Below the pieces are notes generated by a model. The model saw only the letters and a list, made by a program, of their open reading frames with translations, was not told the DNA's origin and searched no databases. This document shows positions 2,906 to 52,116 of a DNA stretch of 64,000 bases, one piece after another. The number at the start of each line of letters is the position of its first letter. Position 1 is the stretch's first letter. Source of the DNA: Octopus sinensis (Eukaryota); contig NC_043011.1 of assembly GCF_006345805.1 (NCBI RefSeq), positions 35,600,464 through 35,664,463 on the forward strand, written 5' to 3'. The translations under genes were made by a program, and so were the position numbers.

Positions 2906-5786
2906 GATAGAGAGAGAGGATCTGGTATAGCTTATAGATTGAACTCAGAATCAGGAGGCTTGTAAAAGAAGAAGAAAAAAAGCCAAAGAACAAATACAAA
3001 AGACAAAGAAGCAGAAAAAAAAAATAGTGCCATAAAAGTGAGCTAGACCACCTCACCAGCCACAGTGATATTATCTAGCACCGTTATCTTGTTCACTAAC
3101 AACAACAACAACAACAGCAACAACAGCATAAATATCAACATTATTGTTTTCTCTTTAATTATACCCTACAACATGAAACGAAAGATTGTGTTCGATTTGG
3201 AGATGGTGGGGGTTATTGAACACTTAAAGTTGCGCGATCAAACAGAGATTTTTACTTGTCTATTATGAGAAGAGACTACCTGCCACCTCGCTCTCTCTCT
3301 TTCTATAACACACATGATTATATTATATATTTTCTTCACCCTACCCCTCTGTCTCTCAATCTTTCACTCACACACACACAGATACACACACAGAGATGCA
3401 TATCCACGTATACATAAATGTACAAAAAGGCAAATATATGCGCACGCAATCACGCAATCCAACCTGTACGCACATCGCTTCATCTTTTAAACATGTTTTA
3501 CTAAATTTGCATGTTTGCAGTTTATTTTTATGGCCAGATAAAACTTGTTTTATTTACATTTGGTTTAATACCTTGTGAAGATGTTCTCATAAAAATATCA
3601 GGTAGGAAAGAGGTAAAAAGAGAGAAATACAGTGCATGCACACATACCTAGGCACTCATACACACAGAGTAATACATCATATGTATAATATATATGCAGT
3701 TATATACATACATGCATACATATATATATGTGTATATATATATATATATACACATATACATACAAATGCACTAACGCACATATATATAATATATATATAC
3801 ATACACATATACATACAAATGCACTAACGCACATATATATATATATAATATATATGCATGTGTATGTGCGTGTGTATGAGTCATACATAATATAGATATT
3901 TGATATATTTACATAAATCTATGTATATTTGCATGTATATATATTTTACCTGTTTTACTGGAATACTCACCCATCTGCATAAGCACATACATACAATCTA
4001 TACGCATATATGCACTAATACATAAGCACGTGTGTATATAGACACACACATATACACAAACACATGTATATACATATATGTATATGTGTGTGTGTGTTTG
4101 TTACACCACACACACACACACAACATTTATTAACATTCCATTACATAACAACTTATATAAACTTCACGTTTTTATATTCATATAGCTATACACATGCACA
4201 GACACACATACAGACATATATGATATGATAACCATAAATACACATATCTACATACGTTTACAGAGACACAGAAAGTTAAGAGCCCACCATGTTATTGGGT
4301 GATGCTCTGTTTACCTTAGGGGAGCCATTTGAATCAACCCACCTTAACCTCTATCAAAACGCAAATTTTAATACTGATGCTTGGAGGTATTTGGTTATTT
4401 TATAGCTTGGAACCAATCTGATTATCTCCGTTTTGGTCTGTACGTGTTGAAGTTTGATTATGCCGTGGCTATCACTCTGTCATGATTGTGAATATATTCC
4501 ATCATCATTAGAACTAGACAACCAACCAGCGATGGAATGGTTTATGCAATGTCTGAATGTCTTAGATAAGCTGTTTTATTTTCCTTTACTACCAGAGAGA
4601 GTTTAGTGAAAGAAAGAATAATGTAGATCAGGATATTTTAAAGGCCTCTGTGACTGACGGAAAGAAAGAAGGAAGTTATCAGACCAGATAACTCATTCAG
4701 CTGCTTGCAACAGAACAGGTTCTATTAAAGACGTGTTATAGACCAGGTGATGGTGTTAGTCCAGGAAATGGATTAAGATTATCGACCTGGAAGTGGAACT
4801 GTCTCACTGGCAGACTTTGATACAATATCCGTTAACCAAATTTCAATCTCCAGAAGCAATGGTACCTCATGGCAGAATATTACCTGAATCCTCACAGTTG
4901 CTAAACGAACTTCCCAATCACTCAGCCATCCATATCATCATCATCATCATCATCATCATTTAGCGAATGTTTTCCATGCTGGTATGGGTTGGCTGGTTTG
5001 AAAGGATCCAGTGAGCTGCAGGGCTGTGCTTAGCTCCAGTGTTAGCTTTGATATAGATTTTATAGTCTGGTGCCCTTCTGAATACATATGACCCTAATTA
5101 ATGAGACTCTTACTTTTAGAACTATTAATCAACATCATCGTTAATGATAAGAAATGTTTACAATACAGGTGCAGGCATGGCTGTGTGGTGGGAGGCTCGC
5201 TTCCTGGCCACATGGCTCCAGGTTCAGACCCACTGTGTAGCACCTCGGGCAAGTGTTTTCTGCTATAGCCTCAGGCTGACCAAGGATTTATGAGAGGATT
5301 TGGTTGACAGAACCTGAAAGAAGCCTGTCGTATGTATATATATATATAATATATTTATATATATATATATATCATCATCATCATCGTTTAACCTCTGTTT
5401 TCCGTGCTAGCACGGATTGGACGGTTCGACCGGGGTCTGGGAATCCAGGAGGCTGCACCAGGCTCCAGTCTGATCTGGCAGTGTTTCTACAACTGGATGC
5501 CCTTCCTAATGCCAACCACTCCGTGAGTGTAGTAGGTGCTTTTTACGTGTCACCGGTACAGGTGCCAGGGGAGGCTGGCAGCGGCCATGATCGAAGCAAC
5601 AAGGATATCCAGTGGTAAAGCAGAGGTAATGCTGCATTACCTCTGGATATCCTTGTTGCTTATTTTGATTTTAATCACCTTATTTTGAAATTGTATGGAT
5701 AATACCATACTAAATTCTGGTGCCTCAACTTAAGTACCATATTCATCTGAATCTATATATATATGTGTGTGTGTGTATGTGTGTGT

Positions 5787-49218: not shown

Positions 49219-49669
49219 AGGAGAATTTATGAAAAAACACAAGACGAAGACAGGTGGTGTACAAAACAAACAGATGTATTAGTATAGCGCTCAGGAATAG
49301 AAAAAGTCTTTTACGTTTCGAGCCTACGCTCTTTTTCAGAAAGGGACACAGAAAAACAAGGAGAAAAAAAAGAAGAGAATAAATGGATATATATATATAT
49401 ATATATATATATTGTCATCATTGTTTAAAGTCCATTTTCCATGTTGGTATGGGTCAGACAGTTTGACATGGAGCTGGACAGCTAAAAGCTGTCCAGACTC
49501 CAATTGTGTGTTGTGGTATGGTTTCTATGACTGGATACCCTTCCTTACACCAACCACCTAAAGCAGTGTGCTGGCTGCATTTTATGTACCACAAGCATGG
49601 GTGTTTTTATGTGGCACTGGCACCATCATATATATATATATTATATATTATATATATATATACATATAC

Positions 49670-49702
<33 letters not shown>

Positions 49703-49781
49703 ATATATACATATATACATATATGATGAGCTTCTTTCAGTTTCCCTCTACTAAATCCACTCACAAGATTTTGGTCACCAA

Positions 49782-49815
<34 letters not shown>

Positions 49816-49845
49816 TAGATAGATAGATGGATAGATAGATAGATG

Positions 49846-49879
<34 letters not shown>

Positions 49880-49962
49880 CAGACAGACAAATAGATACAT
49901 AGATGTACAGATAGATACATTGATATACAGATAGATAGACAAACAGATAAATAGATAGATAG

Positions 49963-50042
<80 letters not shown>

Positions 50043-50117
50043 TTAGGAGAGAGATAAATATATATGGGTATATAATGCAAACACATAAATATGTATATAC
50101 AAATACACACACACACA

Positions 50118-50175
<58 letters not shown>

Positions 50176-50464
50176 TATGTATATATACACACACACACAT
50201 ACACATATGTATACATACATATATTTCTATGCATATAGGCACACTCAAAGACACACTCTGTGTGTGTGTGTGTGTGCATACATATATTAGTAGATATACA
50301 CAAAACCCAGTTATTATAAATGTATTTCTACACTTATTGAAAGAGTTGTATTCTGCATTGCCATTTGATCTCATCTCTTCAGAACAAAGAACACAAAAGT
50401 GTATGTATATTTGTAAGCATGTATGTATATATGTGTGTGTGTGTGTGTATACATACATACATGC

Positions 50465-50505
<41 letters not shown>

Positions 50506-50960
50506 CACACACATACATGTGATAAATATCGGCTTTGTTCATTGTATGTATTTATTTGAGCAAGTTTATTTTTTACTATTTTGCTTCATTAGTAAAGTAA
50601 ACAAACCTTGACTAATGAAACACTTTTGGGCCCCATTAACTCCATAATCAGGTTCATCTTTTTCAAAAGCTTTCGCTCACTTTGCTTGACTGTTATTTTA
50701 ATTCTAACAGAAAAGAAAAGAAAAAAATCAAGTATTTCTGCATCCATTCTATTCTTATAATAACACAACCTTTTGATAATGCTGGGGCTAATGAAACTGT
50801 CTCTATGAGGTCATTGAATCAACCTGGGGGAAAAACAGCATATAAATCTCTATCTCAGATCATATCCTCGTCGTCGTCATCGTCGTCGTCGCCATCGTCA
50901 TCATCATCATCGTTTAACATTCGCTTTCCATGCTGGCACGGGTTGGACGGTTTGACATGA

Positions 50961-51071
50961 TGGTTTCCCTCAGGATAGCTGGCGCCAGCGGGAGAACGAC
51001 ACGCAATTCCGTCCGGTAAAGCGAACGACTGGAGGCCCCGGGGACGTTGACGGCCTCGATCTACTCTCGAA
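50961..51071 (+). pseudogene. Retroposed 28S (LSU) rRNA fragment followed by A11
   Basis: TTTCCCTCAGGATAGCTGGCGC and TCCGGTAAAGCGAA.GA.T.GAGG.C..GGG are conserved eukaryotic LSU segments in correct order and spacing; gaggcc/ggcctc helix preserved. Confidence 0.85.
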
Positions 51072-51085
51072 GATAAAAAAAAAAA

Positions 51086-51316
51086 GGTGGCGAGCTGGCA
51101 GAAACGTTAGCATGCCGGGCGAAATGCTTTGTGGTATTTCGTCCGCCGCTACGTTATGAGTTCAAATTCTGCTGAGGTCGACTTTGCCTTTCATCCTTTC
51201 GGGGTCGATAAATTAAGTACCAGTTACGCACTGGGGTCGATGTAATCGACTTAATACCCATGTCTGTCCTTGTTTGTCCCCTCGATGTTTAGCCCCTTGT
51301 GGGTAATAAAGAAATA
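51086..51316 (+). mobile_element. SINE family A, tail 1, fused to the 28S fragment
   Basis: Full head, core and tail; TSD ggtttgacatg at 50949-50959 and 51317-51327 brackets 28S + A11 + SINE. Confidence 0.92.
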
Positions 51317-51530
51317 GGTTTGACATGCAGCTGGTTAGTAGGAAGCTGTCCAGACTCCAATTGTCTGTTGTGGCATGGTTTCTACGTCCAGATGCCCTTT
51401 CCTAATGCTAACCACTTAGCAGAGTGTGCTGGGTGCTTTTTATGTGCCGCTGGCACAGGTGCCCTCATTTAAGTGGCACCAGCGCCTGAAAGGACAAGCC
51501 TGTATGTATGGGAGACAGCAATTTTACTTA

Positions 51531-52116
51531 GAGGCGAGCTGGCAGAAATGTTAGCAGGTCAGGTAAAATGCTTAGCGGTATTTCATCTGCCACTACGTTC
51601 TGAGTTCAAATTCCGTCGATGTCGACTTTGCCTTTCATCCTTTCGGGGTCGATAAATTAAGTACCAGTTACGCACTGGGGTCGATGTAATCGACTTAATA
51701 CCTATGTCTGTCCTTGTTTGTCCCCTCTATATTTAGCCCCTTGTGGGTAATAAAGAAATAGGTATTTCATCTGCCACTACGTTCTGAGTTCAAATTCCGC
51801 CGATGTCGACTTTGCCTTTCATCCTTTCAGGGTCACTTAAATAAGCACCAGTTACACATTGAGGTTGATATAATCGACTTGATCCCTTTATCTGTCCTTG
51901 TTTGTCCTCTATGTGTTTAGCCCCTTGTGGGTAGTAAAGAAATAGGTATTTCATCTGTCTTTACATTCTGAGTTCAAATTCCACTGAGGTTGACTTTGCC
52001 TTTCATCCTTTCAAGGTCAATAAATTAAGTACCAGTTGCATACTGGGGTCGATCTAATTGACTGTCACTCCCACCAAAAAACATTGCGGGTCTTGTACCT
52101 AGAGTCGAAAAGAATT
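51531..52116 (+). mobile_element. Head-to-tail array of three SINE A units (tail 1, tail 1, tail 2)
   Basis: Both junctions read aagaaata|ggtatttcatctg. Confidence 0.88.

What the first reader, a model, noticed from the sequence alone, without database searches (positions are those of the whole stretch)
50949..51327. 28S rRNA fragment + A11 + full SINE inserted as one unit within a single TSD
Seen: ggtttgacatg (11 bp) flanks a ~110-nt 28S-like fragment, an A11 tract and a complete tail-1 SINE, and removing the insert restores the host RTE-tail repeat. Known: template-switch chimeras (e.g. U6-L1) arise during L1 reverse transcription, and rRNA decay intermediates are oligoadenylated. Inference: the RT copied the SINE, then jumped onto an oligoadenylated internal 28S fragment. 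This would be a genomic fossil of an rRNA decay intermediate, or the founder of a 28S-headed SINE family.
Basis: partly seen in the sequence, partly recalled or inferred. Interest (0 to 1): 0.8.

Follow-up and report, generated by a model that had tools for sequence, protein, structure and literature searches.

The report
28S rRNA piece fused to SINE
A 109-base piece of the animal's own 28S ribosomal RNA, a short A-rich tract and a complete SINE were pasted into the genome together in one retrotransposition event; this is a real but already known kind of template-switch chimera, and it recurs in this genome with U6, U6atac and 5S RNA.

Summary
An exact 11-bp duplication, GGTTTGACATG, occurs only at 50949-50959 and 51317-51327. 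It encloses ATG filler, a 109-nt sense 28S fragment (50963-51071), GAT, A11 and a full-length SINE (51084/51086-51316).

- **28S match:** the fragment is 109/109 identical to at least 8 rDNA-like loci of the same genome.
- **Empty site:** deleting the insert plus one duplicate restores, without a gap, an abundant host repeat.
- **Target site:** length and GGT start are typical of simple insertions of this SINE. The 28S piece has no duplication of its own.
- **Copy number:** the 28S-A-SINE junction is single-copy among scored hits, so it founded no family.

The event belongs to a recurrent class here:
- 17 U6-SINE junctions were found, against 0 for the reversed control pattern.
- A U6-A11-SINE and a 5S-A-rich-SINE insertion each sit inside one duplication.
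- A U6atac-A17-SINE sits at a site where removing it restores the host SINE. Its duplication is short and ambiguous.

A-rich spacers occur in 6/17 U6 chimeras versus 0/29 simple insertions. This favours, but does not prove, an oligo(A) tail on the acceptor RNA.

28S/LINE-1 chimeras are already described in primates. This is a new member of a known kind, of moderate interest.

The parts
50949..50959 (+). 5' copy of the target-site duplication GGTTTGACATG
   Evidence: Exact 11-mer present only twice in the window. It is part of the host repeat in other genomic copies.
50960..50962 (+). 3-nt filler ATG at the 5' junction, matching neither the target nor the 28S
   Evidence: The rDNA reads ...CCGAA before GTTTCCC, whereas the window reads ATG. 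Extra bases at the 5' junction are common in this SINE family.
50963..51071 (+). 109-nt internal 28S rRNA fragment, sense orientation
   Evidence: 109/109 identity to at least 8 rDNA-like loci. Maps to Rfam LSU_rRNA_eukarya model positions about 965-1062. L005 is a contiguous 28S covering model positions 1-2085.
51072..51085 (+). Non-rDNA spacer GAT + A11; the last two A's coincide with the SINE's usual 5' AA
   Evidence: The rDNA continues CTCGGAACGGG here, not GATAAAA. An unbiased sample of SINE copies has 0-2 A's before GG(C/T)GGCG. Only 54 of 37,628 exact heads carry 9 or more A's.
51086..51316 (+). Full-length SINE (head GGTGGCGAGCTGG, B-box-like GAGTTCAAATTC, tail AATAAAGAAATA)
   Evidence: Aligns over positions 1-233 to other copies in the window and genome at 94-96% identity. 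It differs from a majority consensus at 11/233 positions; 5 are CpG transitions and several are shared with other copies.
51317..51327 (+). 3' copy of the target-site duplication GGTTTGACATG
   Evidence: The GGT start is typical of this family's target sites and overlaps the SINE's AAATAGGT end.
50855..51518 (-). Host interspersed repeat, interrupted by the insert, ending in a (GAT/GAC)n tail on the minus strand
   Evidence: 1742 first-look candidates in the genome. The joined flanks align at 75-85% identity to other copies across the insertion point.

Best explanation
This is a bipartite chimeric retrocopy made in one target-primed reverse transcription event.

1. The LINE-encoded enzyme that mobilises this SINE nicked the host repeat at a GGT-starting site.
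2. It primed on the SINE RNA's AAAUAGG(U) 3' end and copied the SINE to its 5' end (AAGG...).
3. It then switched template to the 3' end of a second RNA. That RNA was an internal 28S rRNA fragment ending near nt 1483 and carrying a short A-rich extension (GAU + about 9 A).
4. The cDNA's terminal TT, copied from the SINE's 5' AA, could pair with that A tail.
5. Synthesis ran 109 nt into the 28S and stopped at G1375.
6. The cDNA was joined to the upstream target end with three filler bases, leaving an 11-bp duplication.

Shown directly: single duplication, exact empty site, sense-sense order, 28S identity, recurrence with other RNAs.
Inferred: the order of template use, the TT/AA pairing, and that the A tract was on the RNA. 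An RNA-borne tail would mark a nuclear surveillance or decay intermediate.

The composite is a dead-end single copy, not a new SINE.
For: - Exact 11-bp duplication found only at the two ends. The gap-free empty site is restored against paralogous host-repeat copies.
- The duplication's length (family range 10-17 bp) and GGT start match simple insertions of this SINE. The enclosing duplication is therefore the SINE machinery's.
- The 28S piece plus A tract has no direct repeat of its own.
- The 28S piece is 109/109 identical to the genome's rDNA and lies in sense orientation.
- Same architecture inside a single duplication elsewhere: U6-A11-SINE with a 14-bp duplication (GTATTTTGTCTGCC), and 5S-AAAAGA10-SINE with a 9-bp duplication (AAGAAGCTT). 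A 425-nt unit ending AATAAA+A13, fused to a SINE array, sits inside a 16-bp duplication.
- U6atac-A17-SINE also restores its host SINE, but its duplication is 8 bp or less and ambiguous with the SINE tail.
- 17 U6-(0-30 nt)-SINE-head junctions genome-wide versus 0 for the reversed control pattern.
- A-rich spacers of 5 nt or more occur in 6/17 U6 chimeras versus 0/29 simple insertions (Fisher p = 0.0013). Four of the six are on U6 lacking its U-tract.
- Literature: truncated 28S with homo- and heteropolymeric A-rich tails exists in human cells (PMC1474067). 28S/LINE-1 chimeras, mostly sense, 50-482 nt, n = 18, are reported in primates (10.1101/2025.02.02.635956).
Against: - No orthologous or allelic empty site and no read-level support could be examined.
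- The empty site is inferred from paralogous repeat copies that are only 75-85% identical.
- The A tract could have been added by the reverse transcriptase before the jump. Some non-chimeric copies carry 4-6 extra A's outside their duplication (L045, L043, L058).
- GAT between the 28S and the A's fits either a mixed tail or untemplated filler.
- No other 28S-SINE chimera was found, so breakpoints cannot be shown to recur.
- The source RNA could come from one of the many dispersed rDNA pseudo-copies rather than from mature rRNA.
- The SINE differs from consensus at 4.7% of positions while the 28S piece has 0/109 changes. This is only marginally compatible unless several SINE differences are subfamily variants, and several are indeed shared with other copies.
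Confidence: 0.8

Rival explanations
1. Same single-event chimera, but the A11 and GAT tract was never on the rRNA fragment. The reverse transcriptase added untemplated bases (T's on the cDNA) after reaching the SINE's 5' end, then jumped end-to-end onto an untailed 28S fragment.
For: Some ordinary SINE copies have 4-6 A's between their duplication and the head (L045, L043, L058, L032). Short filler of other composition is common at 5' junctions. Eleven of 17 U6-SINE junctions have no A run, so an A tail is not required for the jump.
Against: None of 29 unbiased simple insertions has an A-rich run of 5 or more, versus 6/17 U6 chimeras. A-rich spacers sit preferentially on U6 copies lacking the U-tract, which is what trimming followed by tailing of the RNA predicts. 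Nine to 20 untemplated bases is long for known end-addition by reverse transcriptases (from general knowledge, not tested).
Confidence: 0.3
2. Two separate insertions. Either a 28S-poly(A) processed pseudogene was inserted first and the SINE later landed exactly at the end of its A tract, or the 28S piece was later inserted exactly at the SINE's 5' boundary.
For: This SINE's 5' junction often forms at A runs of the target, where the A run lies inside the duplication (L036, L040, L049, L034). Poly(A) tails are therefore attractive landing sites.
Against: The A tract is not duplicated after the SINE tail, and the SINE would have no duplication of its own. The enclosing 11-bp duplication starts GGT, as SINE targets do, not A-rich as poly(A)-type elements' targets do. 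The 28S-A piece has no flanking repeat. The same nesting inside one duplication recurs with U6 and 5S, and probably U6atac.
Confidence: 0.05
3. Assembly artefact or DNA-level patchwork, for example capture of fragments during double-strand-break repair, rather than retrotransposition.
For: rDNA fragments are scattered through this assembly with odd truncation points. One locus joins sense 28S to an antisense SINE part (L026).
Against: Perfect duplication, exact empty site, intact SINE ends, sense-sense order and repeated analogous structures at independent loci.
Confidence: 0.03

Closest known systems
Bipartite chimeric retrogenes made by LINE template switching (U6-L1, 5S-L1 and others in mammals; Buzdin et al. 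2003, cited in PMC4758252; tripartite cases in Magnaporthe, PMC2104539)
   Same: Two unrelated RNA copies are fused head-to-tail in the same orientation. The retroelement sits at the 3' side, one target-site duplication surrounds the whole, and small nuclear or ribosomal RNAs are the 5' partners.
   Different: The 3' partner here is a full-length SINE with a specific non-poly(A) tail, so the enzyme is not L1. The host is a 2.7-Gb invertebrate genome whose SINEs look cephalopod-like to me (from memory only). A subset of junctions carries A-rich tracts between the parts.
[quoted passage not shown]
   Same: Internal 28S fragments of 50-482 nt, mostly sense, fused 5' of the retroelement in one insertion. 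Template switching or RNA ligation is the proposed mechanism.
   Different: Those fragments cluster around 28S nt 3636-4115. This one lies at about nt 1375-1483, is fused to a SINE rather than a LINE, and is followed by GAT+A11.
SINE28 (28S 3'-end-derived SINE, PMC4994717) and 5S-headed SINE3/DeuSINEs thought to arise by a SINE-to-5S template switch (PMC4824008)
   Same: An rRNA-derived segment joined to a SINE body. The 5S-SINE locus found here is the kind of event proposed as the origin of such families.
   Different: Those are amplified families with a transcribable head. The 28S-SINE unit here is a single copy with no sign of amplification.
Polyadenylated truncated rRNA decay intermediates (Slomovic et al. 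2006, PMC1474067)
   Same: An internal 28S 3' end followed by an A-rich extension containing occasional other bases (here GAU + A's).
   Different: Those were observed as RNA in human cells. Here the tail is only inferred from DNA, in a different phylum.

Membership tests
Template-switch chimeric retrocopy (U6-L1 type) | One target-site duplication encloses both parts and removal restores the target | tested here: met
   The empty site is shown against paralogous repeat copies, not an orthologue.
Template-switch chimeric retrocopy (U6-L1 type) | Both parts are RNA-derived, in the same orientation, with the retroelement 3' and its 3' end intact | tested here: met
   Sense 28S lies upstream of a full-length SINE with the canonical tail.
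Template-switch chimeric retrocopy (U6-L1 type) | The 5' part lacks its own duplication | tested here: met
   No direct repeat flanks 50960-51085.
Template-switch chimeric retrocopy (U6-L1 type) | Recurrence with abundant small RNAs in the same genome | tested here: met
   17 U6-SINE junctions versus 0 control. U6, U6atac and 5S confirmed by Rfam. Single duplications shown for the U6 and 5S loci; a short, ambiguous one for U6atac.
Template-switch chimeric retrocopy (U6-L1 type) | Presence/absence polymorphism or orthologous empty site showing that both parts arrived together | not testable with these tools
   No relatives or reads of this genome are available (header).
rRNA-headed SINE family (SINE28-like) | Multiple genomic copies sharing the same rRNA-SINE junction | tested here: not met
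   Only the window locus covers the junction. All other hits stop at the 28S edge or start in the SINE.
rRNA-headed SINE family (SINE28-like) | The head supplies a promoter so that the unit is transcribed as a whole | not tested
   No promoter assay is possible. By general knowledge, an internal Pol III promoter in the SINE would start transcription downstream of the 28S piece.
Independent processed 28S pseudogene (poly(A)-dependent retroposition) | Own duplication flanking 28S + poly(A), with an A-rich target start | tested here: not met
   The only duplication starts GGT and also encloses the SINE.
Oligoadenylated rRNA decay intermediate as template | Non-genomic A-rich extension at an internal rRNA 3' end | tested here: inconclusive
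   GAT+A11 is not encoded in the rDNA, and the 109-nt fragment contains no AATAAA. The DNA cannot show whether the A's were on the RNA. The enrichment test favours it.

The most novel reading that the evidence does not exclude
The A-rich, occasionally G/U-interrupted tracts that separate 3'-shortened cellular RNAs from the SINE head are post-transcriptional surveillance tails of the TRAMP/TENT4 kind. The RNAs concerned are an internal 28S fragment, U6 without its U-tract, 5S, and possibly truncated SINE RNAs. On this reading the genome holds a fossil archive of nuclear RNA decay intermediates. They would have been captured because the SINE's 5' AA lets the partner reverse transcriptase jump preferentially onto A-ended RNAs.
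Probability: 0.4. Interest if true: 0.6.

Novelty: new member of a known kind. Interest (0 to 1): 0.42.

Why it matters
The locus is a clean, young example of template switching by a non-L1 retrotransposition machinery in an invertebrate. That machinery is evidently prone to such jumps, given at least 17 U6-SINE chimeras plus 5S, U6atac and 28S cases. Jumps of this kind are the proposed raw material for composite SINEs such as 5S-headed families.

If the A-rich junction tracts prove to be RNA tails, such chimeras would offer a DNA record of which RNAs were trimmed and oligoadenylated in the germ line of a non-model animal. The single 28S locus on its own does not change current understanding.

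Tried and rejected
- **Rfam on the window:** it did not report the 28S piece, only low-complexity microRNA look-alikes. Identity was established through the genome's own rDNA instead.
- **Is the A run part of the SINE?** I first thought so, because 29 of 29 copies had 4 or more A's. That was selection bias from a query containing the A run. An unbiased sample shows only AA.
- **Is there a family of 28S-A-SINE units?** Rejected.
- **Other 28S pieces upstream of A9-SINE heads:** none found among 52 loci, tested against the first ~3 kb of 28S only.
- **GC-rich piece at L135:** it is another dispersed poly(A)-ended repeat, not rDNA.
- **5S-SINE pattern search:** only one locus.
- **ARAGORN:** no tRNA found in the SINE, so its tRNA origin is unverified.
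- **Folding the 28S piece plus tail:** nothing special, z = +1.39.
- **Idea not verified:** that the 5' stop coincides with conserved 2'-O-methyl sites (yeast Gm805/Am807/Am817 exist). I could not verify that they map to this motif.
- **Blocked steps:** one multi-locus Rfam call failed.

Full report
**What is in the sequence.** Reading 50500-51800 shows this order:
- GGTTTGACATG at 50949-50959
- ATG at 50960-50962
- a GC-rich stretch from GTTTCCCTCAGGATAGCTGG to CTACTCTCGAA at 50963-51071
- GAT, then eleven A's (51075-51085)
- a SINE from GGTGGCGAGCTGG to AATAAAGAAATA (51086-51316)
- GGTTTGACATG again at 51317-51327

The 11-mer occurs nowhere else in the window. About 0.06 copies are expected by chance, and no shuffle gave two.

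**The 28S identity.** Rfam run directly on the window missed the piece. A search of the window's own 2.7-Gb genome with 50949-51090 gave at least 8 loci that match query bases 15-123 at 100%, and many more at 93-99%. In those loci the flanks continue as ...GGTTCCCTCCGAA before the match and CTCGGAACGGG... after it. The window's fragment is therefore exactly 50963-51071, 109 nt.

Rfam places the homologous stretch of locus L002 at LSU_rRNA_eukarya model positions about 965-1062. Locus L005 is a contiguous 28S covering model positions 1-2085 and starting at base 127. This puts the fragment at roughly 28S nt 1375-1483. It is an internal piece, in sense orientation relative to the SINE. The fragment contains no AATAAA or ATTAAA hexamer.

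**The SINE and its normal insertions.**
- The SINE is full length relative to other copies in the window and to its closest genomic relatives, which are 94-96% identical.
- In an unbiased sample of those relatives, the head is AAGG(C/T)GGCGAGCTGG with 0-2 A's in front.
- Duplications are 10-17 bp. The base after the AAATA tail is almost always GGT, so the target shares a few bases with the SINE's 3' end.
- A few to about a dozen filler bases at the 5' junction are common.
- The 11-bp, GGT-starting duplication of the window insert is therefore a normal product of this SINE's machinery.
- The genome has 37,628 exact AAGG(C/T)GGCGAGCTGGCAG heads. Only 54 are preceded by 9 or more A's.
- An earlier impression that all copies carry 4 or more A's came from a query that contained the A run. 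I discarded it.

**The empty site.** The left flank belongs to an abundant repeat with 1742 first-look candidates. I joined the flanks in a script, removing 50960-51327. The result aligns across the junction to many other copies. A multiple alignment shows ...GGTTGGACGGTTTGACATG(G/C)AGCTGG... running uninterrupted. The insert is thus precisely bounded. I could not confirm the 'RTE' label for the host. On the minus strand it is a retroposon ending in a (GAT/GAC)n tail.

**One event or two.**
- The 28S-GAT-A11 segment has no direct repeat of its own.
- The SINE has no duplication other than the one that also encloses the 28S piece.
- No A run follows the SINE tail. Had the SINE landed in a pre-existing poly(A) tail, the A run should be duplicated, as it is at L036, L040 and L049.
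- The enclosing duplication has the SINE's target signature.

A single event is by far the simplest reading.

**Not a family.** No other locus covers the junction among the scored hits. All other hits to 50949-51090 stop at the 28S edges. All other hits to 51030-51150 begin in or just before the SINE.

**A recurrent class.** I fetched about 110 nt upstream of the other A9-plus-head sites and scanned 20 of them with Rfam. Three are small RNAs running to their 3' ends:
- a full-length U6 (model positions 1-105, 103 bits)
- 5S rRNA (86 bits)
- U6atac (55 bits)

Each is followed by an A-rich tract and then a full SINE. About a dozen further sites are pieces of the same SINE, some of them 3'-truncated (L142, L170, L134), followed by A runs. 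Others are other repeats. None is a further 28S piece.

- **U6 locus:** GTATTTTGTCTGCC (14 bp) flanks U6-A11-SINE and restores an older host SINE.
- **5S locus:** AAGAAGCTT flanks 5S-AAAAGA10-SINE plus a partial SINE, and restores another SINE family. The 5S 5' GCTT overlaps the duplication.
- **U6atac locus:** removal restores its host SINE around a short ATAGGATT site, which is ambiguous with the SINE tail.

Locus L038 has a 16-bp duplication enclosing a 425-nt unit that ends AATAAA+A13, fused to a SINE array.

A pattern search for the U6 3' end, 0-30 nt, then the SINE head found 17 loci, against 0 for the reversed control. The analogous 5S pattern found only the one locus.

**What the A tract is.**
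- Among the 17 U6 junctions, six have A-rich spacers of 5-21 nt. Some are interrupted by G or T, for example AAAAAGAAAAAAA and ATAAAAAAAATAA.
- Four of these six follow U6 copies with no U-tract.
- The other eleven mostly keep 2-6 U's and join the SINE's AA after 0-4 extra bases.
- None of the 29 unbiased simple insertions has such a run (Fisher p = 0.0013).

The A tracts therefore go with the acceptor RNA rather than with the SINE's 5' end. They prefer 3'-trimmed RNAs, which is the pattern expected of surveillance oligoadenylation. Human cells contain truncated 28S molecules with A-rich tails that include other bases (PMC1474067), and this matches GAU+A(n).

This remains an inference, for three reasons:
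- Two of the eleven A's are the SINE's own.
- An A tail is clearly not needed for a jump.
- Addition by the enzyme is not excluded.

**Age.**
- The duplication is perfect, and the 28S piece has 0/109 differences from current rDNA.
- The SINE differs from a majority consensus at 11/233 positions. Five are CpG transitions, and several are shared with other copies, so they may be subfamily variants.
- The insert looks fairly young, but I cannot date it.

**Comparison with known cases.**
- Template-switch chimeras are well known (U6-L1 and others; Buzdin 2003, as cited in PMC4758252; PMC2104539).
- 28S/LINE-1 chimeras were recently catalogued in primates: n = 18, 50-482 nt, 83% sense.
- SINE-to-5S switching has been proposed as the origin of 5S-headed SINEs.

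This locus is a new member of that kind, in a different phylum and with a non-poly(A) SINE as the 3' partner.

**Limits.**
- No reads, alleles or related genomes were available.
- Only the first ~3 kb of 28S was available for screening partners.
Its SINEs look cephalopod-like to me, from memory only.

Noticed in passing
G000:C29:10554137-10554585 (L185, L173, L186): A full-length U6 snRNA copy, then A11, then a full SINE, inserted inside an older SINE copy with a 14-bp duplication GTATTTTGTCTGCC. Genome-wide there are 17 U6-(0-30 nt)-SINE-head junctions versus 0 for the control.
   Followed up: partly
G000:C7:13475840-13476510 (L136, L131, L137, L184): 5S rRNA, then AAAAGA10, then a full SINE and a partial SINE unit, inside one AAGAAGCTT duplication. 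The 5S 5' GCTT overlaps the duplication. This is the kind of event proposed as the origin of 5S-headed SINEs.
   Followed up: partly
G000:C27:14151490-14151960 (L187, L172, L188): U6atac snRNA, then A17, then a SINE, inserted in another tRNA-like SINE. The duplication is short (ATAGGATT) and ambiguous with the SINE tail.
   Followed up: partly
L038:1071-1943: A 16-bp duplication TATATTTCTCCTTGGT encloses a short SINE-tail-like start (AAAGAAATA), a ~410-nt unidentified unit ending AATAAA+A13, and a SINE plus a partial unit. This may be a multi-jump chimera.
   Followed up: partly
window 51533-52063, and many loci (e.g. L094, L102, L108, L123): Full SINE units are often followed directly by 5'-truncated units that start at internal position ~50 (GGTATTTCG). 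This sequence resembles the family's preferred target and the SINE's own 3' end (AAATAGGT). Nested insertion at this internal hotspot explains some cases (the U6 locus). Template switching may explain others.
   Followed up: partly
L002-L030 (e.g. G000:C18:3.79-4.75 Mb, C19, C3, C2): Dozens of dispersed 28S-derived segments lie on chromosomes. They share truncation points (L005 coordinates 974, 1352, 2959) and are spaced about 46 kb apart on C18, which suggests segmentally duplicated rDNA pseudo-copies. L002 departs from the canonical 28S after base 1714.
   Followed up: no
L026:1373-1629: A 167-nt 28S fragment (98-99% identical to rDNA) abuts the first ~98 nt of an old SINE copy in the opposite orientation. 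This is a different kind of 28S-SINE junction, and it has no A tract.
   Followed up: no
window 49565-50522: Rfam hits to mir-297, mir-466 and similar families, all below gathering score. They fall on (TG)n/(TA)n low-complexity sequence and are not real microRNA genes.
   Followed up: no
L142, L170, L134: Copies of the same or a related SINE truncated at internal positions (~169, ~228, ~115) are followed by A9-A18 and then a new full SINE. They could be A-tailed truncated SINE RNAs used as acceptors. Their duplications were not checked.
   Followed up: no
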